64,000 bases of DNA from Piromyces finnis finn (Eukaryota; Fungi; Neocallimastigomycota). The DNA lies in assembly GCA_002104945.1 (NCBI GenBank), contig MCFH01000039.1, forward strand, positions 248,001 through 312,000, in the 5' to 3' direction. The translations under genes and the position numbers were made by a program. Of this stretch, positions 27,201-64,000 are shown one piece after another (the stretch's first letter is position 1; each line of letters begins with the position of its first letter). The notes under the pieces were generated by a model. The model worked only from the letters and a program-made list of their open reading frames with translations. It made no database searches and was not told the origin of the DNA.

Positions 27201-30200
27201 GTAGTAAGGTCTTCTTCAAGGCTGGTGTTTTAGCTGAATTAGAAGAAATGAGAGATATTCAATTAGCTAAACTTGTCAAAAAGATTCAAGCTATCTGGAG
27301 AGGTTACAAAGCAAGAAAGAACTTCAAAAAGTTACTTGACAAGTTCCACGCTATTCGTGTCATTCAAAAGAATGCTAGAGTTTATGTTAACCTTAAGGAA
27401 TGGTCATGGTGGAAATTATACACTAAGGTTAAGCCTTTATTAAACGTAACTCGTACCGATGAAGAATTAAAGAAGAAGGATGAAGATATTAAGGAATTAC
27501 AAGAAAAGGCTAACAAAGAAGCTGAAGAAAGAAGTAAATTCGAAGCTCTTAGTAATGAACTTGAACAAAAGAAGCAACAATTGGAACAAGATCTTATTAG
27601 TGAAAGAAATCACTCTGCTGAACAAGAAGATAAGCTTAATAACTATAGAACTCAAATTCAAGAAATGCAAGATCAATTAACCGAAACAAAGACTGAATTA
27701 GATAATACTGAATCTCAATACGAAGATGTATTAAACCAAAAGAAGAAGTTAGCTTCTGATCTTGAAGAATTAAATGAACAATTAGAACAAGGTAAGATTA
27801 CCATTGAAAAGTATGAAAAGGAAAAGCAAGCCGAGGAACAATTAATTCAACAATTGAAGGAAAATATTCAAAGTAACACTGATGAAATTGATAAATTAAC
27901 CAGTGAAAAGAAGAATTTAGAACAACAATTAAACGAATTAAACTTAAACCTTGGTGCTGCTCATGACAAGGAAACTGAATTAGAAAAGATCAAGGCCAAG
28001 CTTCAAAACAACGCCAATGAAATTCAAAATAACCTTGATAACGAACAAAAGGCAAAGGAAGAACTTAACAAGAAATTAAACGAATTAACTAAGGAATTAA
28101 AGGCTACTAAGGAAGCTGTTGACGACCTTAATAGAGTTAAAGCTGAACTTGAAAATACCATTGAAAAAAGAGATAAAAACATTGAATCCATTAATACACA
28201 ACTTTCCGAAACCGAATCTGAAAAGGAAAATGTTGAAAAGGCTAGAAGAGAACTTGCCCTTAAGCTCCAAACTGTTGAAGCTGATTTAGAAAATGAAAAG
28301 GCTGAACGTCAAAAACTTGTTAGTCAAAAGAACAAGCTTGAAAATGATATTGAATCTCTCCACGATGTCATTCAAGCCAAGGGTGACGATGAAACTAAGC
28401 AAAATGAACTTAGAAAGATTCGTGAAGCTGAAATGACAAACTTAAAGAGTCAACTCGAAGATACATCTAAGGAATTAGACGATACCAGACGTAAGACAAA
28501 CTCTCAAATTGAAAAGTTAAAGGCTGAAATTGAAGAACTTCAACATGAAAATGAAAACTTAAGACAAATAAAGTCTCAACTTGAAAGAAATGTTAATGAA
28601 TTAACCGAAAAGTTAGAAGACTCTGAAAAGAATGTTGCAAAGTTAGAAAAAACTTGCCGTCAATTAGAAAGCAGTCTTCAAGATTCTCAAAAGCACTCTG
28701 AAGAAATTGAAAATGAATTAAACAATTTAATTGTTGCCAAGGGTTCAATGGAAAAACAAATTCAACTCTTGAATACTCGTGCTGATGAAGCGGAAAGCAA
28801 GTGTGCTACTCTTGAACGTGAAAAGATTCAATTTAAGAAGCTAGCCGAAAACTTGCAAAATGAATTGGAAGAAGAAGTTAACAAAAAAAGAATCTTAGAA
28901 GATGCAAAGAATAAGCTTAATAACAGTATCAATGAATTACAACAACAATACGACGAACTTGAAGCTAACAACAATGATATACAAAGAAAGTTAGCACAAA
29001 AAACTAGTGAATTTGACGCTTACAAGGAAAAATTCAATAAGGAAAATAAGGACAAGATTGAAGAACTTGATTCTTCAAAGAAGAAGATGGAAAAGGAACT
29101 TACCGAAATTAAGGATAAATTAACTTTAGCTGAAAACGCCAAAGACACCTTAGAAAAGACTAAGGCCCGTTTAGTTGCCGAAATTGAAGACTTAAAGCAT
29201 GAAGTTGAACATGAACACAACGTCTCAAGAGCTGCTGAAAAGGCCACTAAGGCTGCTGAAAGTCAACTTAACCAAATTACTCAACAATTAGAAAGTGAAC
29301 AACGTGATCACGCTCTCACCGAATCTCAATCAAAGAAACTTCAATCTACCATTGATTCCTTAAACGATGAACTTGAAAACTTAAAGAATAACTATGATTC
29401 TGTTAATCGTAAGAAGAATGATTTAGAAAACGAATTAAATTCCTTAATTAACGACAGTACTACTAGTAACAACATTCATGACTTAGAAAAGTCTAACCGT
29501 GCTTTAGAAAGTCAACTTAAGGAACTCAAGGAACAACTTGAAGAGATGACTAATGAAAAGGAAAAGGCCGATGAAGGAAAGAAGGTTATCGAACAACAAT
29601 TCCTTAAGTACAAACAAAAGGCTGAACAAGACATGGTTGAAAAAGAAAACCAAATGGAAGAAACTAGAAAGATGTTATACAAGGAAGTTAATTCGTTAGG
29701 TGAACAACTTGATGAAGAAATAGCTGCCAAGAATGAATTAATCAAGGCTAAGAAACGTTTAGAAAACGAAATTGCTAACGCTTCTAACAATGCTGAACAA
29801 TCTACCAAGAATAAGGCTGAAATGGAAAAATCCAACAAGAAATTAGAAACTCTTATTAAGGATCTTAATGCCAAGTTAGAAGGTAAGGAAAAGGAATGCC
29901 GAAACTATGAAGAATTAGCTCGCAACCAAGAACAAAAGTCCAACAACATTCAAAGTGAAATGGAAAAACTTGCTGAAGAACTTGATGCTTTGAAGAGAGC
30001 CAAGAAGCAAGTTGATACTCAATTAGATTCTATTAATTCTGAATATGAACAAATCTTATCTGAAAGAGATTCATTAAGCGATGCTAAGAAGAACCTTGAA
30101 AAGCAAAACAGAGACTTAACCGAACGTTTAGAAGAAATGGAAGATGATCTTAAGGATGCTCAAGAAAGAGGTAGTGTTGCTAACATTGATGAAATTAAGA

Positions 30201-32065
30201 AGAAGGTCAAGGCTGAATTTGAAGAAAAGATTGAAAAGTTAGAAGATTCAAGAAAGGCCTTATTAGCTGACAAGAGAATTAAGGATCAAGATATTGAAGA
30301 TAAGGACAAGACCATTGCCTTATTAGAAAAGCAAAAGAAGATGATGACTGAAGAAAACGACGAATTAAAGAACAACCTTGATAACGAAATTATTGCAAAG
30401 AATGAAGAAATCAATCAACGTAAGAAGCTTACTGCCGATATTAAGGATCTTGAAATTAAGTTGAACCAAGAACAATTAAAGAGTGAAGGTTTGAACGAAT
30501 CCTACGAAGCCTTAAAGGCAAAATACGATACCACTATTTCAAAATTAGATCAAACTGAATTGAACTTAATTAAGGCTGAAAAGGCTGAAGGTTCTCTCAA
30601 GTTACAACTTAAGGAAATGGAAGAAACCTTACAAGATTCTGCCAAGGATCTTAAGCAATACGAAGAAAAGTACAAGCAATTAGAAGACCAACTCCAAGAT
30701 CTTCAAGAAAAGATGGAAGAAGATTCTCAAGATATGCAAGATCTTGTTCTTATGAAGCAAAACCTTCAACAAGAACTTGAATCTAACAACAGTAAGTACC
30801 AAAACGAAATCAATGAACGTGATGAAATGATTGAAAGCACTAGAAAGAAGTACTTAAAGGAAAACCAAAACTTAAGTACTGAACTTGAAATGGAAAGAGC
30901 CACTGCCTTAACCCTTAAGGAAACTAAGAAGAACCTCGAAAACCAAATTAACGAAATTTCAAGTGAATGGGAAAAAGATCGTCGTGAATTACAAGCCTGG
31001 AAGAAGGATAAGGAAAAGTTAGAAAACAGAATTGATGAAATCACCAAGAAGAAGGATGAAGCCAATGCTCGTTGTGATGAATTAGAATCTCAAAAGAACG
31101 ATATTTCCAGTAAATATGGCGATATGAAGACCAAGTGTGAAGATCTCGAAGCTAAATGTAACTTTGCTGAAAAGGCTAAGAAGAACCTTGAATCCCAAGT
31201 TGAAGATCTTAACGAACAAACATTACAATTAACCAAGGCTAAGCAAAACCTTGAACGTAACAACCAAACCATGGAAACTCAAATTGCTGAACTTCAAGCC
31301 AAGTTAGATGAACAACAAGATGAATACACTACTATTATTGAAGATTTAAGAAAGAAGAGTTCTGACCAAGATGAAGTTCACTCTGAATTAGAAAAGGAAA
31401 AGCAAATATCTCTTGACTTGGAACGTTCAAAGATTGCTCTTGAAAAGCAAGTTAAGGAACTTAATTCTCGTATTACTGAATTAGAAGCTTGTGCTCTTAA
31501 CGACAATTCAAGAAATATTTCTAGAATTCAAGCTCGTCTTGATGATGTTTCACAACAACTTGAAAATGAATCTAAAGAAAAGATGCAATTATTACAAAAC
31601 TCACGTAAGACCGAAAGAACTATTCGTGACTTACAAAACCAATTACAAGAAAGAAACAAATATAAGGCTAAATACGAAGAAGATATGGAAAGAAATGAAA
31701 GTAAGATTAAGAAGATGAAGGCACAAATTGAAGAACTTGTAAGTTTTTTCTTTTCATTTTTTTAAATATAATATATATATTAATATTTAAAATAATATTA
31801 AATAATAAAATTTTTTAAATTTAAATATATTTAATTTGTTTTCAAAAAATAGGAATTATCTGAAAGCAACTTACAAATTGCTAAACGTAGAATTGAACGT
31901 GAAGCTAATGAACAACGTGAACGTGCTGCTAGGTAAACAAACTTTATAATTATTATTTATATGAAATTATATAAAATAACATATTTCTAATTCCTATAAA
32001 TAATTATGTTAAATAGATTCGAAAAAGAAAACGAAAAATTAAAGGCCAGAATCAATGCTATTTAA
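24291..32065 (+). CDS. MYO1: Myosin class II heavy chain, multi-exon
   Basis: SH3-like N-terminus, [13 protein letters not shown]-loop [67 protein letters not shown] motifs, WxWWKLY and a very long heptad coiled-coil tail. Stop at 32063-32065. Symbol follows S. cerevisiae usage (myo2 in S. pombe). Confidence 0.97.
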
Positions 32066-32833
32066 GCAAATATAACTTTTTTTTTTTTTTTTCATCATAC
32101 CCCCTAAAATAATACAAAGTACAATCTATAAAATATTTTAACAATTTTCTTTAAAAAAAAAAATAATAATATTGTATATTGAAAAAAGTTGAATATAAAC
32201 TTTAAATAAAAACTATAAAATATATATATATATAGAAAAAGAGAAAAAGTTAGATAATCATTTACATTATTAATAGTGTTGTTATATAAAAAAGCATACA
32301 GAAATGAATAATGTTTTTATCAAAAAAAAAAAAAAAATTGATAAATAATAAAAACCAACCTTTAAATGAAATTATCATTTTAATGATAGAATAATACAAT
32401 GATAAAGTGATATTAGTTCGTGTAAATGGAAAAGGTTTAAATACAATAGAAAAAAAAAAGTTTTTAAATTTATTCATTATATTTCATTAAAAAAAAAAAA
32501 AAATGAATTATTTTATAAAAATATTTAAATATTTATATATTAAAAAAAAAACTTGCCCTATGTTGTTTTATATTAAATGTTCATTAACTATTATTTAATT
32601 GTGGGTGTGTTTCTTTTTCCTTGTTTCTTCTTCTTTTGATAGAGCTATTCATTTATTCGTTTATTTATTTAAATACTTTTTTTAATAATACAAAAATATT
32701 AAATTTTTTTTTAATTTAAAATTTATTAATATTTAAAATTATATTAATTAAAAATATAAATTGGTTAATTTTACCACACTTTAAAATAGTTTGAAGAAGA
32801 AAAAAAAAAAAAAAGTAATTTTTTAAAAAAAAA

Positions 32834-35800
32834 ATGGATCCGGGATATATACATTATATTCCAGTGTTACCACAATACTATTCAAACCCATATTTACAAC
32901 AACAATCTCAACCTCCACCTCCACCACCACCTCCTCCATCACAAGCAGCCCCTCAACCATTAACAAAACCAAATTTCGGTAGTTCAACAGTTATGATACC
33001 AATGGTTACCGCACCTTTACCACAGCAACCACCACCTCCTCCTCCACCTTTACCCTCACCACCACCTCCTCCTCCTCCACCATCCTCACCTCCTCAAACA
33101 AAAGTAGATAATTCGGAAATTCCTCAACAACAACAAAAAGATGAAAATTCTGATTTACAAAAATCACCTAAAAAAAATTCATTAGATTCAGATAACACAT
33201 CTAATTCTACAAATTCAAAAAATGCATCTTCTTCACAATTATTAATTTCTAATAAAAATCCCGATGTAAAACCATACTTTGAGAACGGTAGTGATAGTAA
33301 AGGAAAGGAACATGGAAAAATGAATTATTACTATGGCAATTATGATAGTAAGTATAAATCTGGATATTATTTAGATAATTATTCAAAAGGAAGGTATAAA
33401 TATGGTAAACCTATTAAAGGCGTATATGATTCAAATTCGTCATACAACTATCCAGGAAAGGAAAGTAAAGATTCATATAATTATTCCAAAAAAGATTCTA
33501 AAGATTCATATTATTATACCAAAGATAATGAAAAATATGGTTTTTCAGATTCATATCACTACTCAAATAAAGATATTGATAAATATGAATATTCAGATTC
33601 ATATCATTATATGAATAAAGATAGTATGGAAAAATATCCATATCCTGATAAATCGAGTAAATATGATAAACGTTATGACTACGACTATGACTATGACTAT
33701 GATTATGATTATGACTACGATTATGACTATGATTACAATTATGATTATGATTCCAAATCTCGAAAATATAAAAAATACCCAAAACACTTTTCCAGCAAAT
33801 ATGGTGATAATCCAAAGTATATGGATAGTTTTTATTCAAGTAGAAGAAAATATTCCGATAAAGGACCTAGATATAGAAAGTCAAGAAGAGATTCATATAC
33901 CTATCATAGAAGCGAACTTCAATCACGAAATTCTAGGTATATTTTAAAAAATAAACCAGAGATAAAAAAAGAGGAAGAAGAGTATAAAGAGGTTATACCA
34001 AAATATAATGATATTAATCCAACAGACGTTATTGATGAATTTAAACGTTCAGGTGTATTTGATAATATAAGAAAACTTTTATTAAATAAATTTAAAGAAA
34101 GTTCAGAAATGAAAAATTTAGAAAAGCAAATAAAAGAATCCATTGCGGTAATAAAAAGTAATCCATTAAGGGATTCCACAGATCGAAAATCAAGTAGTAT
34201 TTCATTTGAAAATGCAATGAAATCATGGGAAAAAATGAAACTTCATTCCTTTTTTATGAAAGAATTAGAATTAGAAACAAAAAACTTTAAAGAAACAAGT
34301 GATTTTGTGAGAAAAGAATATTTAGAATCAAAGTACAAAAATGAAATATTCGATGAATTATCAAAGGCTGTCCAAACAATTGACGATAATAAGAAGGAAA
34401 AAATAAGAAAATTAAGGGAGGAAGAAGAGGCAAAACTTAAAAAAGAAGAAAAACGGAAAAAGGAAGAGGAAGAAGGGGAAGAAGAAAAGAATAAATCAAA
34501 TGAAGAAGATAAATCAAAAAATGATTCTGTTTTACCAAAAATTAAATTTGTTATGAAAAACAATGAAACAGACGGTAATTCTGATCAGGATACAAAGAAG
34601 GGAATAAATCAAGATAATCAAGTAAATGTCACGTCAACAACTAACAATAAAAATGAAGCAAACCCGGAAGGTACGATAAAAGATAAAGATTCTATGATGG
34701 AAGTAGAAAAAACCGAAAAAGATAATTTACCGGAAAAAGTGGTAGATAAAAATACTATTGAAAATTCTGATATGGAAATAGATCAAGATGATGAGGAAAA
34801 TGATTATACTGTTGACACAGAAAATAAAAAAAGTAAAGAGGAAAAGGAAGAGGAGAAGCATAAAGAAAAGAAAGCAAAGAAACAAAATAAAAATGAGTCA
34901 GAAGAAAAAGATGAAAAAGGTGAAAAGGTACACAAAAAAGATGAAAAAGAAAACCGAAAAGAAAAAAATAATATTAAGCATAACAGTAAAACCAAAAATA
35001 ATGATATTGACACTGTTGTAAAAGATACCGAGAAAGATGATGATGATGATGATGATGATGATACCAATGATAAGGATAATAGATCTGATATGGAAGTTGA
35101 TATACCCGAACAAAAAGAAAATAATAAAACTTCAAATAAGAAATACGAAAATAAAAAGAATAATGATAAAAAAGAAAATATTGATGTAGCGGAGGAGAAG
35201 GACGATACTGACAATAAAATAAAAAAAGAAAAGGAAAATAAAACAAAAAAGGATTTATTAAATGATAATGATCAAGAAAAAGAAGAAGAAGAAGAAGAAG
35301 AAGAAGAAGAAGAAGAAGAAGACAAGGACAAAAAAAATAAAAAAAGAAAAAAAGAAAATAAAGAAAATGATACTGAAAGAGATAGTGATGAGCAACAAGA
35401 TGAAAGTAATGAAGATGAATCAACCGAACCGGAAAGTAAAAATAATAAAATTATATCAAAAGAAAAAAAGGGAAAGGATCATAAATATAAAAAGAAAGCC
35501 AATGAAAAAGTTGATGATAAGGATAACGATAGTGATGATGAAAGGGAGGATAATAATGATGATGATGGTAATGATGATGATGATGATAGTAGTGATGATG
35601 ATAGTGATGATGATGATGATATTGAAAAGAAAGAAAAAGCAAATAAGCATGAAAATTTAAGAAGATCAAAGAGAAATACAAAAAATAATTCCAATGAAAA
35701 TGAAAAAATGAGTAAAGAGGCATCATCGATAAATGAAGTAAAAAGAATAACAAGATCAAATTCAAAAAAATTGAATATTAAAGGTAATAATAATAATATT

Positions 35801-36131
35801 TAATAATATTTGATAATAAATAAATAAATAAATAAATAAATAATAATAATATTCAATGATATATCATAAAAAAATTGTAGTTAATGAAGAAAATGAAGAA
35901 GAAAAGAAATTCAATGTTGGTGATAAAGTAGCATGTTGGGTTTCTGTTAGAAACTTAAAACCAAATTATAGTTCAGAAAAACGTTGTTATGTTGTTCAAA
36001 TTGATAAATATCTTCCACAAAAGAAAACGTAATTATCATTATTATTAATTTTTTTATTTTAAAAAAAAAATCGATCAATAAACATTAAAAATTATTTTTT
36101 TTTTTTTTTTATAAACTTAATTTAATGTAAC

Positions 36132-53536: not shown

Positions 53537-54732
53537 ATGACTATTGAAAACGTTAGTTGTACCTTAAACAGATACCCAGAGGGTATGGTTAAACTTGATG
53601 ATTTTAAGATTGTTCAAGGTCCAATTCCAGAAATTAGTGATAATGATGTTTTACTCAAGGTTCTTTGCTGTTCTGTTGATCCATTCATGCGCGGTCGTAT
53701 GAAGAAGGATAACCCAAGTTCTTATGTTCCACCATGTCAACCAGGTAAAGTTATCCAAGTTTTCTCTATTACCCAAGTTGAAAAGATTGGTGCTAATGTT
53801 ACCGATATTAATGTTGGTGACAAGTACATGTGTTTCAACGGTATTGAAAAATACACTGTTGTTCCACAACAAGCTATTAAGGGAGATGGCCAAAAGAACC
53901 TCGGTAACTACAACAAGATTGATCCAAACAATCCAATAAAGGATTCATTCTACCTTGGTTTATTCGGTAAATAAATAAAAATTTTTTTTTTTTACAAGAA
54001 TAGTTAAAAAAAATTGGTGGTGTGTATAGTTTGTTTACCTTCGTAAAAACTAATAAAATTTTTTTGTGACCAAAAAAAATATGAATTAAAATATAAATAG
54101 GTATGCCAGGTATGACTGCTTGGGCTTTCTTTAACAAGGTTGGTAAGCCAAAAGAAGGTGAAACCATTTTTGTTAGTGCTGCTTCTGGTGCCGTTGGTCA
54201 AGTTGTTTGTCAACTTGCTAAGCTTAAGGGTTTAAAGGTTGTTGCTTGTGCTTCTTCTCCAGAAAAAATTGGTTTCTTAAAGGGTGCTATTAAGGTTGAT
54301 GAAGCTTTCAGTTACCGTGACTTCCCAGACAAGGAATCCTTCGTTGCTCAATTACGTAAGGTTTGTCCAAACGGTATTGATATCTACTTTGATAATGTTG
54401 GTGGATACATTCTTGATTCTGCTCTTCAACTTATGAATGTTCATGGTAGAGTTGTTATGTGTGGTATGATCTCTCAATACAACCTTAAGGACAAGTACCA
54501 ATACACCCTTCAAGATATCTCTAACAGAAGACTTACTCTTCAAGGTTGCTTATTCAACGATTACTTCCCAAGATGCATGGGTGAATTTATGCAAGATATG
54601 ATTCCAATGGTTCAATCCGGTAAACTTATCTACAAGGAAGATGTTTACAAGGGTGTTGAAAAGACTCCAGAAGCTTTTATTGGTTTATTCAACAGTAAAA
54701 ACTTTGGTAAGGTTGTCATTGAACCATTCTAA
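53537..54732 (+). CDS. NADP-dependent oxidoreductase, MDR superfamily (prostaglandin reductase / 2-alkenal reductase / CurA-like), one intron 53967-54100
   Basis: SVDPFMRGRM, LFG|MPGMTAW, FVSAASGAVGQVVCQLAKLKG, PNGIDIYFDNVGG, GRVVMCGMISQYN and AFIGLFNSKNFGKVVI. The two track ORFs join in frame through a GT-AG intron. Confidence 0.93.
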
Positions 54733-55242: not shown

Positions 55243-55320
55243 TAGATTTTGTTACGCTTTATTTGGATTGATTCCTTTCCTTTGAAATGGAACTTTGTTT
55301 CCATTGTTTCTATTCCAAAG
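55243..55320 (+). pseudogene. Short remnant of a related LINE reverse-transcriptase gene
   Basis: Translates to IWIDSFPLKWNFVSIVSIPK, against IWDGDFPNSWNESSIVSIPK in the intact RT (13/20 identical). It stops abruptly where the repeat ladder starts. Confidence 0.6.
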
Positions 55321-55754
55321 CCCTCTTGGGAACGTGCCTTCATTTATTTAATAAATGTAGTTTCTACCCTCTTGGGAACGTGCCTTCATTTATTTAATAA
55401 ATGTAGTTTCTACCCTCTTGGGAACGTGCCTTCATTTATTTAATAAATGTAGTTTCTCAAGGGGGTCTACTCATGCTCATGGTACTGAGAGAGTAGAAAG
55501 AATTAAACCCTCTTGGGAACGTGCCTTCATTTATTTAATAAATGTAGTTTCTCAAGGGGGTCTACTCATGCTCATGGTACTGAGAGAGTAGAAAGAATTA
55601 AATCCAAGTATTGCGCAATGGATGCTTGGTGCCCTCTTAGGAATGTGCCTTCATTTATTTAATAAATGTAATTTCTCAAGGGGGTCTACTCATGCTCATG
55701 GTACTGAGAGAGTAGAAAGAATTAAATCCAAGCATTGCGCAATGGATGCTTGGT
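55321..55754 (+). repeat. Ladder of nested 5'-end copies of the retroelement: A+a, A+a, AB, ABC+g, A'BC(full element)
   Basis: A (45 bp, CCCTCTTGGGAACG...GTAGTTTCT) at 55321, 55367, 55413, 55508 and a variant at 55632. B (50 bp, CAAGGGGG...AATTAAA) at 55458, 55553 and 55677. C (28 bp, TCCAAG...CTTGGT) at 55603 and 55727. Confidence 0.93.
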
Positions 55755-55866
55755 TAGTCTTCAAGGGAAAATTATTAGGACTAAGCTCATGGTACTGAGC
55801 GATTAAAAAACATTTTATTCATCAAATTTAAGTATTTGATGAATAAGTGAATGTTTGATTTTTCAG

Positions 55867-56207
55867 GTAAGTTTGTATAGTATTTAATTAGAAGAGTAAT
55901 ACATTTTGTTGCTGTATTTTTTCTTTTATTCATGTATTCATGTAGTACTACTCTTCTCTTGTAAGAATCCAATGTAGTCAACTTTAGCATTTGCATTGTA
56001 CTTTTATATTCATGTAGCTATTGTTGTATTGTTTCTTGTAAGAGACTGATTCACTCTACATCATGTAAAAATACTATTCACAAGCTTTCTGGTGTCGACA
56101 TTCTTGATTCAAATTTTTTACCAATTTAAATATTTAATGAAAAGTAAAGTCAAACAAGTTTAGTGTCAAAAAGCGAATCGAATTTACTAACAACAAACCA
56201 AAACTAG
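55867..56207 (+). other. Putative spliceosomal intron in the LINE 5' UTR
   Basis: CAG|GTAAGT donor at 55867, TACTAAC branch site at 56185-56191, CTAG acceptor at 56204-56207. The same three signals occur in copy 2 (61348; 61666-61672; 61685-61688). Confidence 0.55.
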
Positions 56208-56397
56208 AATTTTTAAAGAAAATTTACAACTAGAATTCAAAAAAAGAAACTTTAAACAAAGCATCGTAACAATTTTTGTACTATCCAGTACTTTTAAGAA
56301 GAGAGAGAGAGACAGATTTTTTTCCATATACGTTATATTTGTAATTTTTATTAGTATTTATTTTATATTCAATATTTTTTAATTAGAATTTATTATC

Positions 56398-59300
56398 ATG
56401 TCAGTCCTTTATATTAAAGATAAGAATTATATCAGACGTGGTACCCGGTCTTATGGTATCCCCTTAGATGATATTCGCTCCTTCTTTATCCGTGGTATTC
56501 GATCATGGTCAGTAAATATGCTATGGGAAAAACTCGAGGTTATTCTAGAAGATAAATTTAATTCAGTTATTAGTGTTAAATATTTTCAAACTTTCAATGA
56601 TCACTTTTTCTTAGTCAAGGTTCATGGTTCATCAAAAGATTGTATTAAAATCTTACACATGTTAAAGAAGAAACTTTCAGTTACCTCAATTTCCTTTTCA
56701 GCTCGTAGTAGAAGGAATCACAAATACACTTTTTCCACTCTCAAACGTAAAATTTTAGTTTCTAATAAACATCAACATTCTATTCAACAATCATTTCAAC
56801 AATCAGTTCAACAATCAGTTCAACAATCTCATCAACAATCCGATCTTCAACAAGATCTTCAACAGGATCTTCAACAAGTTTCCCATCATGAAAATATTCC
56901 AGATCTACAGCAAACACAATTTCAATCTCAACATTCAACAATTAATTCTAATAGTTCTATCAACTCTGATAACAGTTCAATAGTTGATAGTTCTTCAGTT
57001 TCACAGCCATCTAGTAATAGTTCTACTTATTCCTCTGATGCATCATCCATTAATAACGATGACTTTAATAATAATAATAATAGCAACGATTCTTCCTCAT
57101 CCAACAAGCCTGTTAACTTTTCTTTTTGTCTTAGTTGGAACACCAATGGGTGGAATCATGAAAAGAGAGATAGTATTAGCTATTTCACAGCTATTTTCAA
57201 ACCATTATTCTTATGTTTCCAAGAAACTGGTAATGGTTCTGGATCGAATACAGATTATCCTTGTCGTGTTACTTTGCGAAACTATAGACACTTTTTCAAG
57301 AAAGCTGACGAATCAGTTCCGGGAATGAGAGGTTTATATTTAGGTTTTCACAATTCGTGTCAAGCCTCACTTGAAAACTTCTCTGGAAAGTATATTATTT
57401 CTATTTATACTTTTAGTCTCTGGAATAGATTCAAATGCTCGATTGGAAATGTTTATATGCCTCATAGTCATCACAACATCTATGTTGATCATGCAAAGTT
57501 AGAAGTTCGCTTGTGGTTACAAACTCATTCATCCCATCCATCGATTCTTGTTGGTGATTTTAATATGTCTAAAGTAAAATTATCCAACTGGTTATCAACT
57601 AATGGATTAGGAGATTGGGAAATTCTTCCGCTTAGAGGGTCTACTATCTCTTGGACTCGAGGTGATCAATCTTCCGACATTGACCATGCTCTTATCAATT
57701 CGAAGATGAAAGATCTTATTCACTCAGGATCATTTATAAATAATTTTTATCCTGTATCAGACCATAAGCCACTTCTTATTAATGGTAAAATTATTCCTAT
57801 GGAAGATTTTTCTAATGACTTTAATGTTCCTAAGAAAATTCTGAAATGGAATAGATTAAAATGTATTGAGGAAAAGGAATCTATTCTCAGTCATAATAAA
57901 TTCCAAATACTTTCAGCAAAATCCAACGATCCTAATGTTTCTACAGATGAACTTTCCAAAGAGTTTACTTCAACTGCTTTTTCAATTGCAGACGAGCTCA
58001 GTATTACCTCAGCAAATAATGTTATAAAGTCTTCATTTCATATTTCACAACAAATTTTTAATCTCCAAAAAATCAAAATGAAGTTGTATAAGAGATTTAA
58101 AAAAGAAAGAATTTATGATATAGATGAATTTATTAAAAGAATTAAAATCTACCGTAAACTCATTGATTACATCCACAAAAGATGTAATGAATTTAGGAAG
58201 CAAGAATATCTTCATTGGATTAAAACAGGATGTGAGTATATGAAGAGTCATAATCCTAAGAAGGCCTGGAAATGGATCAAGAAAACTGCAAAAATTGGAA
58301 AAGATTCTTTCTTTATTGCTCAACCAATTAAAAACAAAAATGGAGAATTAGTTGTTGCTACGGAAGAACAACTAGATGTGTGGCATGATCATTTCGAAAA
58401 GCTTGCATCAGATCCAAGTGGTGTAAGTCTTGATTTGGAGCATTGGTATGAAGAACCAACGAATAAACGTTTTTCACTTCCTATGCTTGATGAATGGGAT
58501 ATCAACCAAGATATTAGTATTGATGAAGTCAAGTCAGCTATCCTCTCTACTCCGAATTATAAAGCATCAGGTCCGGATGGTATTCCAATTGAATTTTACA
58601 AAGCATTAATTCCATCAAGTAATGATTCTAATAATGCTACAGATAATAATTCTTCCGGTAATACCACTTCAGATAATGATGCTTATGGTTTAAATTTTAT
58701 TCTTAAATTATTCAACCGTATTTGGGATGGAGACTTCCCCAACTCATGGAATGAATCCAGTATTGTTTCTATTCCTAAGAAGGGAGATTTGACAGATTGT
58801 GATAACTATCGAGGTATATCACTTATCAATAATGGTATTAAGTTGATTTCCAAAATTGTCACCACTAGAATCTCAGAATATGGTCTAAAGAATAATTTCA
58901 TTAGACCTGAACAATTTGGTTTTCGAAAAAAGGAAGAAAGTATCAGTCTTTTCATTTCAATCCAAGAAATATGCCGTAGACGTCAATTAGATAATAAAGA
59001 GACATATTTGGCCTTTTTAGATCTCAGGAAAGCATACGATTCAGTCCCAATCGGTAATATTCTCCATAAATTAGATTGTTTAGGAATCCGAGGTAAGAGT
59101 TTACAATTCATCAAAAATTTATATTTAACATCTAAGGCTAATGTCAAATTAGATGGACAATTCTCGAAATCTTTTGATGTGAAGAAAGGAGTCCGTCAAG
59201 GATGCCCTCTTTCTCCTATTCTCTTTAATCTCTTTATTAATGATATATTTAAAGAGTGTGAAGATCTCGGAGTCAGTTTAGGTGACACTCGATGCTGTGG

Positions 59301-60924
59301 TGGACTTTTTGCAGATGATATAGTTATTTGTGCTCCAACAAGAGGATGCTTAAAAAAGATGCTTAGAAGAGTTAATGAATGGGCCTTGTATAATGAAATG
59401 GAATTTGGTATCCAGAAGTGTTCAACGATGGTGATTCGTCCTGAATCAATAGAAAATCAGAACAAGAGAGATCCAACATTTTACTTAGCAGGACAACCCA
59501 TTCCAACTACTGATTGTTATACTTATCTTGGTGTTCCATTTGATAAGAATCTGTCCCTTAAACCAGTTATTAAAGCTCTTAATAACAAGGTTTTGAAAGG
59601 ACTTTTCTCAGTCAGTAAATTCTTAAGAAATCCTAATATTCCTATTCCCTTCAAAAAGCTAGTACTTAACTCACAAGTGATTAGCAGAGTTTCATACTTT
59701 GCACCATTACTTGGATCCAACAAAGCCAGGTCTAGGATTGCACAGAAGCATGTTAACAAAGGAATACGATGGGTTGCCGGAGTTCATAAAGCTGTATCGT
59801 TTATATCTTTATACTCTATCTCAAAAGATTTGAATATTCCTCCATTGTCAGCCAAATGTGGGTTAGCTCAGGTTAGATGTTTTAACAAATGGAAAAACTC
59901 AAATTGTATTATCTCACACCTTGTCAATTACATTCCTAAATTTAGAAAATACACGTGGTGCAAATCAAGTAGGACACTTGATAAAAAACTAAAGAAACAT
60001 GGAGATGTTAAAGCAGTTAAAAACTTTTATTGGAAAGATCTCAAAGGGAATTCAATCAAAGCGCAATATTATGATGATAATAAGTTTATTGATACTAAAG
60101 ATTTTATTAAATTATGTTATGAGTACCCAGAGTTTGCCTATGGCTTCTACTGGCTATTGAAAGCAAGAAGCGGATATAAGTTGGATGCTAGAGTTGCCAA
60201 AGCTGCCAAATTTGTTGATCCAGTTTGTCCTAACTACTGTCCATGTTGCAAGTGTGGAGATCAAAGTATTAAACATTGGTTATTAGATTGTCCAACATTT
60301 AGAGATATCCGTATTAAACATTATGATTCCATAGTCCAGCTATTAAATTTTTTCAGTAAACGTAATTCCAATAGTCCTATCAATAATAATGAAATTGATA
60401 ATATCAGTAGAGATAGTAATAATATTAATAGTAATAGTAACAATAGTAATAATAACAATAGTAATAGTAACAATAGTAATAATAACAATAGTAGTAATAG
60501 AAATAATAATATTAGTAATGATAGCAATAGTGAAGATAATAATTCTAATTTAGATAGTAATTTAGTTAATGATAGTAATAGTTCTAATAATCCGGTGAAT
60601 ATTAATGTGTATGATTATTCTAGTGTGTGCAGTAAAATATTTAAATTCCTTCTTGGGGGAAGAAGTTTTAACAATATCAATTACAATTCAAGGGAATGGA
60701 AAGAACTTTGTAAGCGTCAGATTCAATCTGGTACTAACGAAGGAACACCATTCTTGACGGTAACCGCGGAACTTCTAACCAAAATCATGCCTTTTGCTAT
60801 TGGCCAGCAATGGTCAATGTTCAAAAGGTTTGAAGCAACATCCAAGAGCGTCAATGCTGAAGAAACAGTAAGACAGGCCAGGAGGGCCAGCGCAACCAAT
60901 GGAGATCATAATTTTGTCCCATGA
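56398..60924 (+). CDS. LINE polyprotein: RRM-like N-terminus, APE endonuclease, reverse transcriptase, C-terminal CCHC knuckle
   Basis: APE motifs: CLSWNTNG, FQET, ILVGDFN, SDIDH, SDHKPL. RT motifs: KASGPDGIP, IPKKGDLTDCDNYRGISL, QFGFR, AFLDLRKAYDSV, GVRQGCPLSPILFNLFIND, LFADD, YTYLG. Zinc knuckle: CPCCKCGDQSIKHWLLDC. No stops or frameshifts. Confidence 0.96.
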   Translation: MSVLYIKDKNYIRRGTRSYGIPLDDIRSFFIRGIRSWSVNMLWEKLEVILEDKFNSVISVKYFQTFNDHFFLVKVHGSSKDCIKILHMLKKKLSVTSISFSARSRRNHKYTFSTLKRKILVSNKHQHSIQQSFQQSVQQSVQQSHQQSDLQQDLQQDLQQVSHHENIPDLQQTQFQSQHSTINSNSSINSDNSSIVDSSSVSQPSSNSSTYSSDASSINNDDFNNNNNSNDSSSSNKPVNFSFCLSWNTNGWNHEKRDSISYFTAIFKPLFLCFQETGNGSGSNTDYPCRVTLRNYRHFFKKADESVPGMRGLYLGFHNSCQASLENFSGKYIISIYTFSLWNRFKCSIGNVYMPHSHHNIYVDHAKLEVRLWLQTHSSHPSILVGDFNMSKVKLSNWLSTNGLGDWEILPLRGSTISWTRGDQSSDIDHALINSKMKDLIHSGSFINNFYPVSDHKPLLINGKIIPMEDFSNDFNVPKKILKWNRLKCIEEKESILSHNKFQILSAKSNDPNVSTDELSKEFTSTAFSIADELSITSANNVIKSSFHISQQIFNLQKIKMKLYKRFKKERIYDIDEFIKRIKIYRKLIDYIHKRCNEFRKQEYLHWIKTGCEYMKSHNPKKAWKWIKKTAKIGKDSFFIAQPIKNKNGELVVATEEQLDVWHDHFEKLASDPSGVSLDLEHWYEEPTNKRFSLPMLDEWDINQDISIDEVKSAILSTPNYKASGPDGIPIEFYKALIPSSNDSNNATDNNSSGNTTSDNDAYGLNFILKLFNRIWDGDFPNSWNESSIVSIPKKGDLTDCDNYRGISLINNGIKLISKIVTTRISEYGLKNNFIRPEQFGFRKKEESISLFISIQEICRRRQLDNKETYLAFLDLRKAYDSVPIGNILHKLDCLGIRGKSLQFIKNLYLTSKANVKLDGQFSKSFDVKKGVRQGCPLSPILFNLFINDIFKECEDLGVSLGDTRCCGGLFADDIVICAPTRGCLKKMLRRVNEWALYNEMEFGIQKCSTMVIRPESIENQNKRDPTFYLAGQPIPTTDCYTYLGVPFDKNLSLKPVIKALNNKVLKGLFSVSKFLRNPNIPIPFKKLVLNSQVISRVSYFAPLLGSNKARSRIAQKHVNKGIRWVAGVHKAVSFISLYSISKDLNIPPLSAKCGLAQVRCFNKWKNSNCIISHLVNYIPKFRKYTWCKSSRTLDKKLKKHGDVKAVKNFYWKDLKGNSIKAQYYDDNKFIDTKDFIKLCYEYPEFAYGFYWLLKARSGYKLDARVAKAAKFVDPVCPNYCPCCKCGDQSIKHWLLDCPTFRDIRIKHYDSIVQLLNFFSKRNSNSPINNNEIDNISRDSNNINSNSNNSNNNNSNSNNSNNNNSSNRNNNISNDSNSEDNNSNLDSNLVNDSNSSNNPVNINVYDYSSVCSKIFKFLLGGRSFNNINYNSREWKELCKRQIQSGTNEGTPFLTVTAELLTKIMPFAIGQQWSMFKRFEATSKSVNAEETVRQARRASATNGDHNFVP

Positions 60925-61135
60925 TAAAATTTTGATCTTTGGCTCGGTGTCCCATTGGAAGTCAAATACAATTATTATACTTTAGTATGATAGTGGCTTT
61001 CTTACTTTAATTAAAATTACTAGAATACATTATACCCAATTTTTATTCATTTGTGTTTATTTAAACATATTTTTTTTTATTTTTATTTTATTTTAATTTT
61101 TATATTACATGTATTATAATTTTAATTAAATTAAT

Positions 61136-61160
61136 AATAAAGTTTAAAATATTTGATGCC

Positions 61161-61195
<35 letters not shown>
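61136..61195 (+). terminator. Polyadenylation signal and encoded poly(A) tail of LINE copy 1
   Basis: AATAAA at 61136-61141, 22 nt upstream of a run of 32 A. Confidence 0.85.
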
Positions 61196-61197
<2 letters not shown>

Positions 61198-64000
61198 AAG
61201 AATTAAATCCAAGCATTGCGCAATGGATGCTTGGTTAGTCTTCAAGGGAAAATTATTAGGACTAAGCTCATGGTACTGTGCGATTAAAAAACATTTTATT
61301 CATCAAATTTAAGTATTTGATGAATAAGTGAATGTTTGATTTTTCAGGTAAGTTTGTATAGTATTTAATTAGAAGAGTAATACATTTTGTTGCTGTATTT
61401 TTTCTTTTATTCATGTATTCATGTAGTACTACTCTTCTCTTGTAAGAATCCAATGTAGTCAACTTTAGCATTTGCATTGTACTTTTATATTCATGTAGCT
61501 ATTGTTGTATTGTTTCTTGTAAGAGACTGATTCACTCTACATCATGTAAAAATACTATTCACAAGCTTTCTGGTGTCGACATTCTTGATTCAAATTTTTT
61601 ACCAATTTAAATATTTAATGAAAAGTAAAGTCAAACAATTTTAGTGTCAAAAAGCGAATCGAATTTACTAACAACAAACCAAAACTAGAATTTTAAAAAA
61701 AGTTAACAACTAGAATTCAAAAAAAAAAAAACTTTAAACAAAGCTTCGTAACAATTTTTGTACTATCCAGTACTTTTAAGAAGAGAGAGAGAGACAGATT
61801 TTTTTCCATATACGTTATATTTGTAATTTTTATTAGTATTTATTTTATATTCAATATTTTTTAATTAGAATTTATTATCATGTCAGTCCTTTATATTAAA
61901 GATAAGAATTATATCAGACGTGGTACCCGGTCTTATGGTATCCCCTTAGATGATATTCGCTCCTTCTTTATCCGTGGTATTCGATCATGGTCAGTAAATA
62001 TGCTATGGGAAAAACTCGAGGTTATTCTAGAAGATAAATTTAATTCAGTTATTAGTGTTAAATATTTTCAAACTTTCAATGATCACTTTTTCTTAGTCAA
62101 GGTTCATGGTTCATCGAAAAATTGTATTAAAATCTTACACATGTTAAAGAAGAAACTTTCAGTTACCTCAATTTCCTTTTCAGCTCGTAGTAGAAGGAAT
62201 CATAAATACACTTTTTCCACTCTCAAACGTAAAATTTTAGTTTCTAATAAACATCAACATTCTATTCAACAATCATTTCAACAATCAGTTCAACAATCAG
62301 TTCAACAATCTCATCAACAATCCGATCTTCAACAAGATCTTCAACAGGATCTTCAACAAGTTTCCCATCATGAAAATATTCCAGATCTACAGCAAACACA
62401 ATTTCAATCTCAACATTCAACAATTAATTCTAATAGTTCTATCAACTCTGATAACAGTTCAATAGTTGATAGTTCTTCAGTTTCACAGCCATCTAGTAAT
62501 AGTTCTACTTATTCCTCTGATGCATCATCCATTAATAACGATGACTTTAATAATAATAATAATAGCAACGATTCTTCCTCATCCAACAAGCCTGATAACT
62601 TTTCTTTTTGTCTTAGTTGGAACACCAATGGGTGGAATCATGAAAAGAGGGATAGTATTAGCTATTTCACAGCTATTTTCAAACCATTATTCTTATGTTT
62701 CCAAGAAACTGGTAATGGTTCTGGTTCGAATACAGATTATCCTTGTCGTGTTACTTTGCGAAACTATAGACACTTTTTCAAGAAAGCTGACGAATCAGTT
62801 CCGGGAATGAGAGGTTTATATTTAGGTTTTCACAATTCGTGTCAAGCCTCACTTGAAAACTTCTCTGGAAAGTATATTATTTCTATTTATACTTTTAGTC
62901 TCTGGAATAGATTCAAATGCTCCATTGGAAATGTTTATATGCCTCATAGTCATCACAACATCTATGTTGATCATGCAAAGTTAGAAGTTCGCTTGTGGTT
63001 ACAAACTCATTCATCCCATTCATCGATTCTTGTTGGTGATTTTAATATGTCTAAAGTAAAATTATCCAACTGGTTATCAACTAATGGATTAGGAGATTGG
63101 GAAATTCTTCCGCTTAGAGGGTCTACTATCTCTTGGACTCGAGGTGATCAATCTTCCGACATTGACCATGCTCTTATCAATTCGAAGATGAAAGATCTTA
63201 TTCACTCAGGATCATTTATAAATAATTTTTATCCTGTATCAGACCATAAGCCACTTCTTATTAATGGTAAAATTATTCCTATGGAAGATTTTTCTAATGA
63301 CTTTAATGTTCCTAAGAAAATTCTGAAATGGAATAGATTAAAATGTATTGAGGAAAAGGAATCTATTCTCAGTCATAATAAATTCCAAATACTTTCAGCA
63401 AAATCCAACGATCCTAATGTTTCTACAGATGAACTTTCCAAAGAGTTTACTTCAACTGCTTTTTCAATTGCAGACGAGCTCAGTATTACTTCAGCAAATA
63501 ATGTTATAAAGTCTTCATTTCATATTTCACAACAAATTTTTAATCTTCAAAAAATCAAAATGAAGTTGTATAAGAGATTTAAAAAAGAAAGAATTTATGA
63601 TATAGATGAATTTATTAAAAGAATTAAAATCTACCGTAAACTCATTGATTACATCCACAAAAGATGTAATGAATTTAGGAAGCAAGAATATCTTTGGATT
63701 AAAACAGGATGTGAGTATATGAAGAGTCATAATCCTAAGAAGGCCTGGAAATGGATCAAGAAAACTGCAAAAATTGGAAAAGATTCTTTCTTTATTGCTC
63801 AACCAATTAAAAATAAAAATGGAGAATTAGTTGTTGCTACGGAAGAACAACTAGATGTGTGGCATGATCATTTCGAAAATCTTGCATCAGACCCAAGTGG
63901 TGTAAGTCTTGATTTGGAGCATTGGTATGAAGAACCAACGAATAAACGTTTTTCACTTCCTATGCTTGATGAGTGGGATATCAACCAAGATATTAGTATT
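61195..64000 (+). mobile_element. Second copy of the same LINE, head-to-tail directly after copy 1's poly(A); truncated by the window edge
   Basis: Starts AGAAAGAATTAAA-C... and is roughly 99% identical to copy 1 by eye across the leader and ORF. Confidence 0.95.
61880..64000 (+). CDS. LINE polyprotein copy 2 (partial; open to the window end)
   Basis: ATG TCA GTC CTT at 61880, colinear with copy 1. The only indel seen in the ORF is an in-frame loss of one His codon (CTT CAT TGG to CTT TGG, about 63694). Confidence 0.9.
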   Translation, partial: MSVLYIKDKNYIRRGTRSYGIPLDDIRSFFIRGIRSWSVNMLWEKLEVILEDKFNSVISVKYFQTFNDHFFLVKVHGSSKNCIKILHMLKKKLSVTSISFSARSRRNHKYTFSTLKRKILVSNKHQHSIQQSFQQSVQQSVQQSHQQSDLQQDLQQDLQQVSHHENIPDLQQTQFQSQHSTINSNSSINSDNSSIVDSSSVSQPSSNSSTYSSDASSINNDDFNNNNNSNDSSSSNKPDNFSFCLSWNTNGWNHEKRDSISYFTAIFKPLFLCFQETGNGSGSNTDYPCRVTLRNYRHFFKKADESVPGMRGLYLGFHNSCQASLENFSGKYIISIYTFSLWNRFKCSIGNVYMPHSHHNIYVDHAKLEVRLWLQTHSSHSSILVGDFNMSKVKLSNWLSTNGLGDWEILPLRGSTISWTRGDQSSDIDHALINSKMKDLIHSGSFINNFYPVSDHKPLLINGKIIPMEDFSNDFNVPKKILKWNRLKCIEEKESILSHNKFQILSAKSNDPNVSTDELSKEFTSTAFSIADELSITSANNVIKSSFHISQQIFNLQKIKMKLYKRFKKERIYDIDEFIKRIKIYRKLIDYIHKRCNEFRKQEYLWIKTGCEYMKSHNPKKAWKWIKKTAKIGKDSFFIAQPIKNKNGELVVATEEQLDVWHDHFENLASDPSGVSLDLEHWYEEPTNKRFSLPMLDEWDINQDISI

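What the first reader, a model, noticed from the sequence alone, without database searches (positions are those of the whole stretch)
55321..64000. Self-targeting Russian-doll LINE: an element that appears to insert repeatedly into its own 5' UTR, building a head-to-tail array
Seen: five starts of the same 5' sequence of increasing length (45, 45, 95, 123 bp, then full length), then a complete LINE with a poly(A) tail, then a second copy that begins inside its own leader. The 41 bp just left of copy 1 (AGAAAGAATTAAA+C, 55590-55630) recur just right of its poly(A) (61195-61235, one mismatch), which is the arrangement of a target-site duplication. Single extra bases (a, a, g) sit at three of the four 5' junctions. 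Inference: copy 1 inserted into the leader of copy 2 and left A4-B2-C1 on the left. The stubs AB, A and A would then be the severed 5' ends of three more copies further downstream, each hit in its leader by the next insertion. The first-strand nick (bottom strand 5'-TTTCT/AC) resembles APE-type TTTT/A cleavage, and long TSDs are known for RTE-clade elements. Self-nesting would give the element a safe harbour and tandem amplification. It recalls telomeric or subtelomeric arrays (HeT-A/TART, Cryptococcus Cnl1) but with the element's own leader as target. I do not know a description of this in gut fungi. An alternative reading is a 13-bp TSD (55495-55507 / 61195-61207) with an internally repeated 5' end produced by template jumping.
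Basis: partly seen in the sequence, partly recalled or inferred. Interest (0 to 1): 0.9.

Follow-up and report, generated by a model that had tools for sequence, protein, structure and literature searches.

The report
Nested LINE pair with 5' stutter
An abundant, active LINE retrotransposon of a gut fungus (very probably Piromyces finnis) has landed once inside the leader of another copy of itself with an ordinary 13-bp target duplication, and the short 'ladder' in front of it is best read as partial re-copying of leader RNA by the reverse transcriptase, not as five nested self-targeted insertions.

Summary
Five starts of the same leader lie at 55321, 55367, 55413, 55508 and 55632. They are followed by a full 5.56-kb LINE with a poly(A) tail, then a second copy that restarts at leader position 83.

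The Russian-doll reading is not supported.
- A copy of the same family elsewhere in Piromyces finnis (L008) sits in ordinary AT-rich DNA. It has one leader, no ladder and an 11-12 bp TSD. A SINE-like insert inside it has a 13-bp TSD.
- So the perfect 13-bp repeat AGAAAGAATTAAA (55495-55507 / 61195-61207) is the real TSD.
- The 41-bp "TSD" mismatches at a site that separates two subfamilies. The 123-nt stub is the L008 type, whereas both long copies are a different, minority type.
- All three stub end points fall at helix boundaries of the predicted leader RNA.

Best model: one chance nested insertion, plus 5' template switching onto leader RNAs.

Three or four nick sites share AGANANT. The motif is common and is commoner on the element's sense strand.

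Earlier unchecked notes of this scan report similar head-to-tail LINE arrays on other pieces of this genome, so preferential self-insertion is not excluded. Interest is moderate.

The parts
55249..55320 (+). Left flank: fragment of a different LINE family's RT coding region (..WNFVSIVSIPK), cut exactly where the ladder begins
   Evidence: The frame translation resembles this LINE's ..WNESSIVSIPKKGDL. Three DNA contigs continue past 55320 with AAAGGCGATCTTTCAGA, which reads KGDLS, as expected for uninterrupted copies of that family (loose ends).
55321..55412 (+). Two identical 45-nt leader stubs (leader 1-45), each followed by one extra 'a'
   Evidence: They break at 45|46; nt 46 is unpaired (p=0.99) in the predicted leader fold.
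55413..55507 (+). Leader positions 1-95: the severed 5' part of the target copy (copy 2). Its last 13 nt (55495-55507) are the left target-site duplication
   Evidence: Perfect 13-bp repeat with 61195-61207. No extra base at the junction with 55508. The length matches the family TSDs of 11-13 bp in L008.
55508..55631 (+). Extra complete 5' module (leader 1-123, three hairpins) plus one extra 'g'. It is of the L008 haplotype (G8, C13, G40, T102), unlike copy 1
   Evidence: 100% identical to the L008 leader. T102 is shared with L008, not with copies 1 and 2. It ends one nt after hairpin 3.
55632..61194 (+). Copy 1, a full-length LINE: leader hairpins 55632-55754, 5' UTR to 56397, ORF 56398-60924 (N-terminal domain, APE, RT, zinc knuckle), 3' UTR, poly(A) 61164-61194
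   Evidence: ORF. RVT_1 E=1.3e-35. Exo_endo_phos 31.2 bits, above cut-off. Closest solved structure is human L1 ORF2p. The leader fold has z=-5.7.
61195..61207 (+). Right copy of the 13-bp target-site duplication AGAAAGAATTAAA, directly after the poly(A)
   Evidence: The nick site is preceded in the intact leader by AGAGAGT.
61195..64000 (+). Copy 2 (the target copy) from leader position 83 onward. Its ORF starts at 61880 and is open to the window end. It is the same minority subfamily as copy 1
   Evidence: 99.0% identical to copy 1. It shares 59 differences from L008 with copy 1 and has 17 private differences. tblastn covers aa 1-708.

Best explanation
This is an abundant, transcribed, APE-type (L1-like) non-LTR retrotransposon family of an anaerobic gut fungus, very probably Piromyces finnis. 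Two ordinary processes produced the structure.

(1) Nested insertion. Copy 2 was already present, inserted into an older LINE of another family. Its leader was then nicked on the bottom strand after leader nt 82 (top strand AGAGAGT^AGAAAG) and on the top strand after nt 95. Copy 1 was made there by target-primed reverse transcription. This left a 13-bp target-site duplication and split copy 2 into a 95-nt 5' stub and the rest.

(2) 5' stutter. When the reverse transcriptase reached the capped 5' end of the copy-1 RNA (the extra g), it switched to another, L008-type leader RNA. It copied that RNA's three-hairpin module (nt 123 to 1) before the cDNA was joined to the target. The two 45-nt stubs in front of copy 2 record the same kind of event at copy 2's own integration, or one such event followed by a 46-bp tandem duplication.

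What is shown: the anatomy, the TSD length of the family, the haplotypes, and the normal insertion of the family elsewhere. What is inferred: that template switching, rather than further insertions, made the 45-nt and 123-nt units.
For: - Family TSD length. In L008 (P. finnis MCFH01000011.1) a 97.6%-identical full-length copy has a single leader directly after its flank, no ladder, and an 11-12 bp TSD (A)TTTCTTAAAAA. A poly(A) SINE-like insert inside it has a 13-bp TSD. The perfect 13-bp repeat here fits; 41 bp does not.
- Haplotypes. The 123-nt stub is 100% identical to the L008 leader and carries T102. Copies 1 and 2 share C102 and 58 other differences from L008. At the downstream sites listed in the read data, the L008 state is the majority (about 80%) in the DNA reads (places 55762, 55824, 56001).
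- No crossover. Copy 1 stays minority-type to its 3' end. There is therefore no sign of a crossover that would have removed a nested copy.
- Breakpoints. 45|46, 95|96 and 123|124 lie at helix boundaries of the predicted leader RNA (unpaired probability 0.99 at nt 46, 0.92-1.0 at nt 95-96), whereas the nick at 82|83 lies inside a stem.
- Junctions. The three junctions read as switches each carry one extra base. The integration junction (55507|55508) carries none, like L008.
- Module exchange. In relatives L001 and L004, about 105 nt of leader ending after hairpin 3 are 94% identical, while the rest of the elements is at most 72% identical. This shows that the 5' module is exchanged between LINE lineages.
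- Nick motif. AGANANT^ precedes three poly(A) junctions: leader 83, ORF place 58516, and the L008 LINE. The L008 SINE-like site is similar (AAGAAGT). The motif occurs about once per 255 bp in the window, and 20 times on the sense strand against 8 on the antisense strand of the element. A same-orientation hit in a leader therefore needs no special targeting.
- Precedent. [quoted passage not shown] L1 chimeras with other RNAs are reported (10.1101/2025.02.02.635956 and PMC4476161, abstracts).
Against: - Only one other genomic copy of this family could be fetched, so the frequency of ladders and of leader hits is unknown.
- The 95-nt stub assigned to copy 2 carries G8/C13/G40, whereas the only known leader of copy 2's subfamily (copy 1) has A/T/A. 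This requires a recombinant or polymorphic leader.
- Two adjacent copies both carrying 5' reiterations is a coincidence if such events are rare.
- Two identical 45+1-nt units need either the same switch twice or a later duplication.
- Unchecked first-reader notes on other pieces of this genome (s1-185440, s1-176580, s1-185442) describe arrays with junctions inside the element's 5' module. That would favour preferential self-insertion.
- The sequence right of the window, which would decide the matter, could not be read.
Confidence: 0.55

Rival explanations
1. Russian doll. Five copies each inserted into the leader of the previous one. The 123-nt stub is copy 2's 5' end (41-bp TSD), and three more copies follow copy 2.
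For: The stubs all begin at element nt 1 and increase in length. The 41-bp repeat exists. Extra bases at 5' junctions are typical of full-length LINE insertions. Other notes of this scan report leader-junction arrays.
Against: - The 41-bp repeat mismatches at a subfamily-diagnostic site.
- Family TSDs are 11-13 bp.
- It needs three different target sites, one of them hit twice with an identical result.
- Four leader hits at one locus are very improbable unless targeting is strong, yet L008 and the ORF junctions show untargeted insertion.
- An LTR element is noted 16.4 kb past the window end. That leaves room for fewer than the predicted copies.
Confidence: 0.07
2. Several true self-insertions into leaders (self-homing), followed by homologous recombination between the tandem copies. 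The recombination deleted the inner remainders and left orphan stubs on the left.
For: Tandem 5.5-kb direct repeats recombine easily. This rescues the stub count without requiring further copies downstream. It is compatible with the 13-bp TSD pairing of the 95-nt stub with copy 2. Notes s1-185440 and s1-176580 claim recurrent 5'-module junctions.
Against: - Copy 1 is minority-type along its whole length, although the stub in front of it is L008-type. A crossover would therefore have to lie at the extreme 3' end.
- The implied nick sites near nt 33 and nt 111 lack the AGANANT context (sequence).
- The stub ends coincide with RNA helix boundaries, which a DNA-level nick would not explain.
Confidence: 0.13
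3. One integration event only. The RT made a concatemer by serial template jumps: copy-2 RNA up to nt 83, then the poly(A) end of copy-1 RNA, then leader fragments 1-123, 1-95, 1-45 and 1-45. The 13-nt overlap is coincidence.
For: All four stubs share G8/C13/G40, and the 123-nt stub also carries T102, as in L008. This is as expected for fragments drawn from the RNA pool. All stub ends are at RNA helix boundaries. Head-to-tail products from tandem template copying are reported for R2 proteins. A poly(A)|58516 junction exists in RNA contigs. Notes s1-176565 and s1-176719 describe TSD-less arrays and concatemers.
Against: The overlap between the 95-nt stub and the restart at nt 83 is exactly the family's TSD length and is perfect. 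The chance of that is about 3% if the two break points are unrelated. Position 83 lies inside a stem, unlike the other break points.
Confidence: 0.12
4. The repeats are a heritable, monomer-type 5' end (a tandem promoter module) carried by the source elements and copied with them.
For: The 123-nt unit is a complete three-hairpin module. One DNA contig joins place 55635 back to place 55508 with an extra T (table 5c), hinting at another locus with a related 5' reiteration. Mouse L1 has tandem monomers (own knowledge).
Against: L008 has a single module. The two modules in front of copy 1 differ at 4 of 123 sites and belong to different subfamilies. The units are truncated at their 3' side, not their 5' side. 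RNA contigs barely cover the 45-nt ladder (first depth bin).
Confidence: 0.08
5. Assembly artefact of a long-read assembly in a repeat.
For: High-copy family. Only 75% of the sampled 31-mers of the ladder are held by the main DNA run.
Against: The units are short enough for any long read to span. The two long copies differ at 27 sites, and the stubs carry a distinct haplotype, which is not what collapse or mis-joining produces.
Confidence: 0.03

Closest known systems
L1-like APE-type LINEs (human L1 ORF2p is the closest solved structure)
   Same: APE endonuclease plus RT plus C-terminal Cys/His knuckle. Poly(A) tail. Short variable TSDs. Target-primed reverse transcription. An extra G at the 5' end consistent with cap copying.
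   Different: A single 1508-aa ORF with a roughly 230-aa N-terminal domain instead of a separate ORF1. Nick context AGANANT^ rather than TT^AAAA. A structured three-hairpin 5' module.
Tail-to-internal and head-to-tail tandems of non-LTR elements formed by double or nested insertion (McGurk and Barbash 2018, PMC5932611)
   Same: A poly(A) end of one copy abuts an internal or 5' position of the next copy of the same family, with a target duplication in the junction. It is produced by transposition, not recombination.
   Different: Here the hit lies in the leader and is accompanied by a ladder of partial leader copies.
Template jumping by LINE reverse transcriptases (R2 in vitro and PRINT 'extra template' 5' junctions, PMC11371274; U6/L1 chimeras, PMC4476161)
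   Same: After reaching the 5' end of its template, the RT continues on another RNA, often with one or a few untemplated bases at the joint.
   Different: The acceptor here is the element's own leader (another copy's RNA), entered at internal helix boundaries, and this happens repeatedly.
Mouse L1 monomer arrays (own knowledge)
   Same: Tandem repetition of a 5' regulatory module.
   Different: Mouse monomers are heritable, of equal length and truncated at the 5' side of the first unit. Here the units are 3'-truncated, of unequal length and absent from another copy (L008).
Site-specific or array-forming LINEs (R1/R2, Dictyostelium TRE, HeT-A/TART, Cnl1, Chlorella Zepp; own knowledge)
   Same: Head-to-tail same-orientation stacking.
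   Different: No fixed external target. No tRNA in the window. Not at a chromosome end. The family also inserts in ordinary DNA.

Membership tests
APE-type non-LTR retrotransposon (LINE) | Reverse transcriptase domain | tested here: met
   Pfam RVT_1 E=1.3e-35, aa 792-1047. PDB best hits are L1 ORF2p, E about 1e-33.
APE-type non-LTR retrotransposon (LINE) | Apurinic-like endonuclease N-terminal to the RT | tested here: met
   PF03372 at 31.2 bits against a cut-off of 24.5, on aa 231-500. QET, GDFN and SDH motifs are visible in the translation.
APE-type non-LTR retrotransposon (LINE) | 3' poly(A), no LTRs, flanking target-site duplications of variable sequence | tested here: met
   Poly(A) of 31-32 nt. 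TSD of 11-12 bp at L008 and 13 bp here. No terminal repeats.
Site-specific / self-targeting LINE | Most copies sit at one target sequence (here: the element's own leader) | tested here: not met
   L008 lies in unrelated AT-rich DNA. Other junctions are at ORF places 58516 and 59201 and in another LINE family. The sample is small, so a preference is not excluded.
Site-specific / self-targeting LINE | Endonuclease with a long, rare recognition sequence | tested here: inconclusive
   Three or four nick sites share only AGANANT^, which occurs about once per 255 bp per strand in the window.
Telomeric / subtelomeric LINE array (HeT-A/TART, Cnl1) | Array at a chromosome end | tested here: not met
   55 kb of ordinary genes lie to the left. 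At least 27 kb of contig lie beyond the right end.
tRNA-gene-targeted LINE (TRE-like) | tRNA gene at a fixed short distance from the array | tested here: not met
   No tRNA gene anywhere in the window.
Monomer-type 5' UTR (mouse L1 kind) | Tandem 5' units present in the family's full-length copies generally | tested here: not met
   L008 has one leader. The units here are unequal and of mixed haplotype.
Template-switch 5' chimera | Joint exactly at the 5' end of the LINE RNA, with the upstream piece derived from a different RNA | tested here: met
   All joints lie at element nt 1, with 0-1 extra base. The 123-nt piece has a different subfamily haplotype from copy 1. The RNA-level mechanism itself is inferred.
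Known self-cleaving ribozyme at the LINE 5' end (HDV-like and others) | Match to a curated ribozyme model | tested here: not met
   No Rfam hit at E<=10 in the leader or at E<=1 in three relatives.

The most novel reading that the evidence does not exclude
The three-hairpin leader is a preferred landing site for the element's own machinery (self-homing). On this reading the stubs are scars of several successive leader insertions, whose remainders lie downstream or were lost by recombination. The family would then build head-to-tail arrays as a safe harbour, as several unchecked notes on other pieces of this genome also suggest.
Probability: 0.2. Interest if true: 0.7.

Novelty: new member of a known kind. 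Interest (0 to 1): 0.38.

Why it matters
If the template-switch reading holds, this locus is a clean natural record of serial 5' template switching by an L1-like reverse transcriptase, with break points set by RNA structure. Together with the near-identical 5' module shared by divergent LINEs in related fungi, it suggests how LINE lineages acquire and exchange promoter or leader modules. It also cautions against reading same-family nesting in a LINE-rich, AT-rich genome as evidence of targeting. If the self-homing reading were right instead, it would be a new target choice for a LINE.

Tried and rejected
- Exact look-up of the ORF product, and of a large host ORF, in the contig collection: nothing found. 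The window's own scaffold therefore could not be extended to the right.
- Protein searches: only relatives at 70% identity or less, plus one P. finnis gene model, P0222. Only one extra genomic copy (L008) was obtained.
- Metagenome scans with a leader 27-mer and with a C-terminal protein piece: nothing.
- Read laying returned assembler contigs only, which cannot cross 30-nt poly(A) runs. The region 61062-61249 was skipped as repeat, so the poly(A)|83 junction could not be counted genome-wide.
- tRNA targeting rejected.
- Known ribozyme or RNA family for the leader rejected.
- Relatives from other species (L001, L003, L004, L006, L009) show single leaders and no arrays. Most are short-read contigs that would break at arrays.
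- DNA-level tandem duplication rejected. It cannot place a new leader start after nt 95.
Full report
**What is there**

The window is AT-rich (about 20% GC). In 55321-64000 it holds the only copies in the window of one LINE family.

Five sequences start with CCCTCTT, at 55321, 55367, 55413, 55508 and 55632.
- The first four stop after 45, 45, 95 and 123 nt.
- Single extra bases (a, a, none, g) follow them.
- The fifth continues as a 5563-bp element ending in a pure poly(A) at 61164-61194.
- Directly after the poly(A) the element restarts at leader position 83 and runs to the window end. This copy 2 is 99.0% identical to copy 1.

A 32-nt leader probe gives 5 hits against 0 in shuffles.

**What kind of element**

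- The single ORF (56398-60924, 1508 aa) has an APE-type endonuclease (PF03372, 31.2 bits, above cut-off).
- It also has an RT domain (RVT_1, 1.3e-35) and a weak zf-RVT knuckle.
- Human L1 ORF2p is the closest solved structure.
- Relatives (70% identity or less) come from rumen and gut metagenomes and from Anaeromyces, Piromyces, Orpinomyces and Neocallimastix records.
- A 96%-identical fragment sits in a Piromyces finnis gene model (P0222). The host is therefore very probably P. finnis.
- The family is high-copy and is present in RNA runs of the organism.

**Surroundings**

- An oxidoreductase-like host gene ends at 54732.
- No tRNA gene is in the window.
- The 72 nt left of the ladder (55249-55320) are not host DNA. 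They are a piece of another LINE family's RT region, on the same strand, cut after ..SIVSIPK.
- Three DNA contigs continue past 55320 with letters that encode KGDLS, as intact copies of that family would.
- The whole structure therefore sits inside an older LINE.

**The key comparison**

L008 (P. finnis MCFH01000011.1:739399-761083) carries a 97.6%-identical full-length copy in ordinary AT-rich DNA.
- It has one leader that starts right after the flank, no extra base and no ladder.
- Its TSD is (A)TTTCTTAAAAA, 11-12 bp.
- A roughly 595-bp poly(A) SINE-like element inserted in that copy has a 13-bp TSD, TTTAACAATATCA.

The family's machinery therefore makes 11-13 bp duplications. The perfect 13-bp repeat AGAAAGAATTAAA (55495-55507 and 61195-61207) fits this. 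The 41-bp repeat does not.

**Haplotypes**

- The four stubs share G8/C13/G40, and the 123-nt stub has T102. This is exactly the L008 leader (100% over 126 nt).
- Copy 1 has A/T/A/C.
- Copy 2 has C102 and shares 59 differences from L008 with copy 1. It also has 17 private differences, and copy 1 has 10.
- At the listed downstream diagnostic places the L008 state is the majority in the DNA reads, at about 80%.
The 123-nt stub comes from an L008-type template, not from copy 2.
- Copy 1 is minority-type to its 3' end. There is no sign that a nested L008-type copy was removed by crossover.

**RNA structure**

- The leader folds into consecutive hairpins (z=-5.7).
- The stub ends 45|46, 95|96 and 123|124 fall at helix boundaries. 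Unpaired probability is 0.99 at nt 46 and 0.92-1.0 at nt 95-96, and 123 is one nt past hairpin 3.
- The nick at 82|83 lies inside a stem.
- DNA nicking has no reason to respect RNA helices. RNA-level switching, or RNA fragment ends, would.

**The 5' module behaves as a unit**

In relatives L001 and L004 the first roughly 105 nt (three hairpins, same layout, conserved GCGCAATG loop) are 94% identical. The rest of those elements is at most 72% identical or unalignable. This echoes note s1-176605. It shows that this module moves between LINE lineages, as 5' template switching would allow. No Rfam family matches it.

**Target choice**

- The top-strand heptamer before the nick is AGAGAGT at the leader site, AGAAACT at the L008 LINE, and AGATATT at the poly(A)|58516 junction seen in RNA contigs.
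- The L008 SINE-like site has AAGAAGT.
- AGANANT occurs about once per 255 bp per strand in the window. In the element it occurs 20 times on the sense strand and 8 times on the antisense strand. Only one occurrence lies in the first 240 nt, and that is the site used here.
- With a family this abundant, occasional same-orientation hits in its own leader are expected without any homing.
- Other joints point to insertion at many places: a 5' end next to ORF place 59201, and poly(A) next to 58516.

**Model**

Best model (confidence about 0.55):
- Copy 2 was inserted into the older LINE.
- Copy 1 was then inserted into copy 2's leader with a 13-bp TSD.
- At the capped 5' end of the copy-1 RNA (the extra g), the RT switched to an L008-type leader RNA and copied nt 123 to 1 before joining.
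- The two 45-nt units in front of copy 2 are the same kind of event at its own integration, or one such event plus a 46-bp duplication.

Template jumping, 'extra template' 5' junctions and head-to-tail products are documented for R2 proteins (PMC11371274). L1 chimeras with other RNAs are reported. Tail-to-internal tandems of non-LTR elements formed by repeated or nested insertion are common in Drosophila (PMC5932611).

**Rivals**

- Strict Russian doll: 0.07.
- Several leader insertions followed by recombinational loss: 0.13.
- One-event concatemer: 0.12. It is penalised because a 13-nt perfect overlap of exactly TSD length would be a coincidence.
- Heritable monomer-type 5' end: 0.08.
- Assembly artefact: 0.03.

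**Weak points of the best model**

- Only one further genomic copy was available.
- The 95-nt stub assigned to copy 2 has G/C/G, whereas copy 1 of the same subfamily has A/T/A.
- Both neighbouring copies carry reiterations.

**Earlier notes of this scan**

Unchecked first-reader notes on other pieces of this genome describe head-to-tail LINE arrays.
- Some have junctions in the element's own 5' module: s1-185440, s1-176580, s1-185442.
- Some are variably truncated or lack TSDs: s1-176565, s1-176719, s1-176601.
- Some lie next to tRNA genes: s1-176549, s1-182189, s1-173597.

The scan has therefore seen this kind of arrangement before on other DNA. I could not read those sequences, so preferential self-insertion remains possible (about 0.2).

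**Verdict**

This is a new member of known kinds, namely an L1-like LINE, a nested tandem and a 5' template-switch chimera. The ladder whose break points follow RNA structure is the unusual feature. Interest is moderate.

Noticed in passing
L001:359-462 and L004:152-256 (relatives from GCA_016295205.1 / GCA_016295295.1); window 55632-55754: A roughly 105-123 nt three-hairpin 5' module is 94% identical between two LINEs whose bodies are at most 72% identical. The P. finnis leader has the same layout, with covarying stems around a conserved loop. That loop contains ATTGCGCAAT, a palindrome of the bZIP / C/EBP-site type. No Rfam match.
   Followed up: partly
L008:10833-11427: A roughly 595-bp poly(A) non-autonomous element is inserted in the LINE copy with a 13-bp TSD. 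Its head contains a tRNA-like GGTTCGACCCC box. Its tail shares about 53 nt (85%) with the LINE's 3' coding end. It is a likely SINE partner of this LINE (compare note s1-180631).
   Followed up: partly
L006:181-300 and L009:8427-8545 (also L003:1139-): A second leader type (CCCCTAGCAGGGGCGTACT..) in related LINEs has the strand order P1-P2-hairpin-P1'-hairpin-P2', which recalls the HDV-like nested double pseudoknot. No Rfam hit; not modelled.
   Followed up: no
L009:8427-10560 (Anaeromyces robustus MCFG01000096.1): An internally deleted derivative of a related LINE (aa 5-336 joined to aa 1413-1499) that keeps the leader and the 3' end. It is a candidate non-autonomous deletion element annotated as a host gene.
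   Followed up: no
window 55249-55320: Remnant of a different LINE family's RT region, same strand, interrupted by the ladder. Intact members elsewhere continue KGDLS.
   Followed up: partly
window 55866-56397 and 61347-61879: The 5' UTR contains CAG|GTAAGT and a long AT-rich stretch before the ATG (a possible retained intron; noted separately as s1-173763). RNA contigs cover it unspliced (records 17, 25, 26).
   Followed up: no
window 56772-56900: 12-nt periodic repeat (TCAACAATCAGT-like) that encodes a Q/S-rich tract in the N-terminal domain. RNA contigs and L008 lack one 12-nt unit.
   Followed up: no
window 25949-35803: Two very large ORFs (1938 and 989 aa) lie in a GC-richer block (0.31-0.34). 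Not examined.
   Followed up: no
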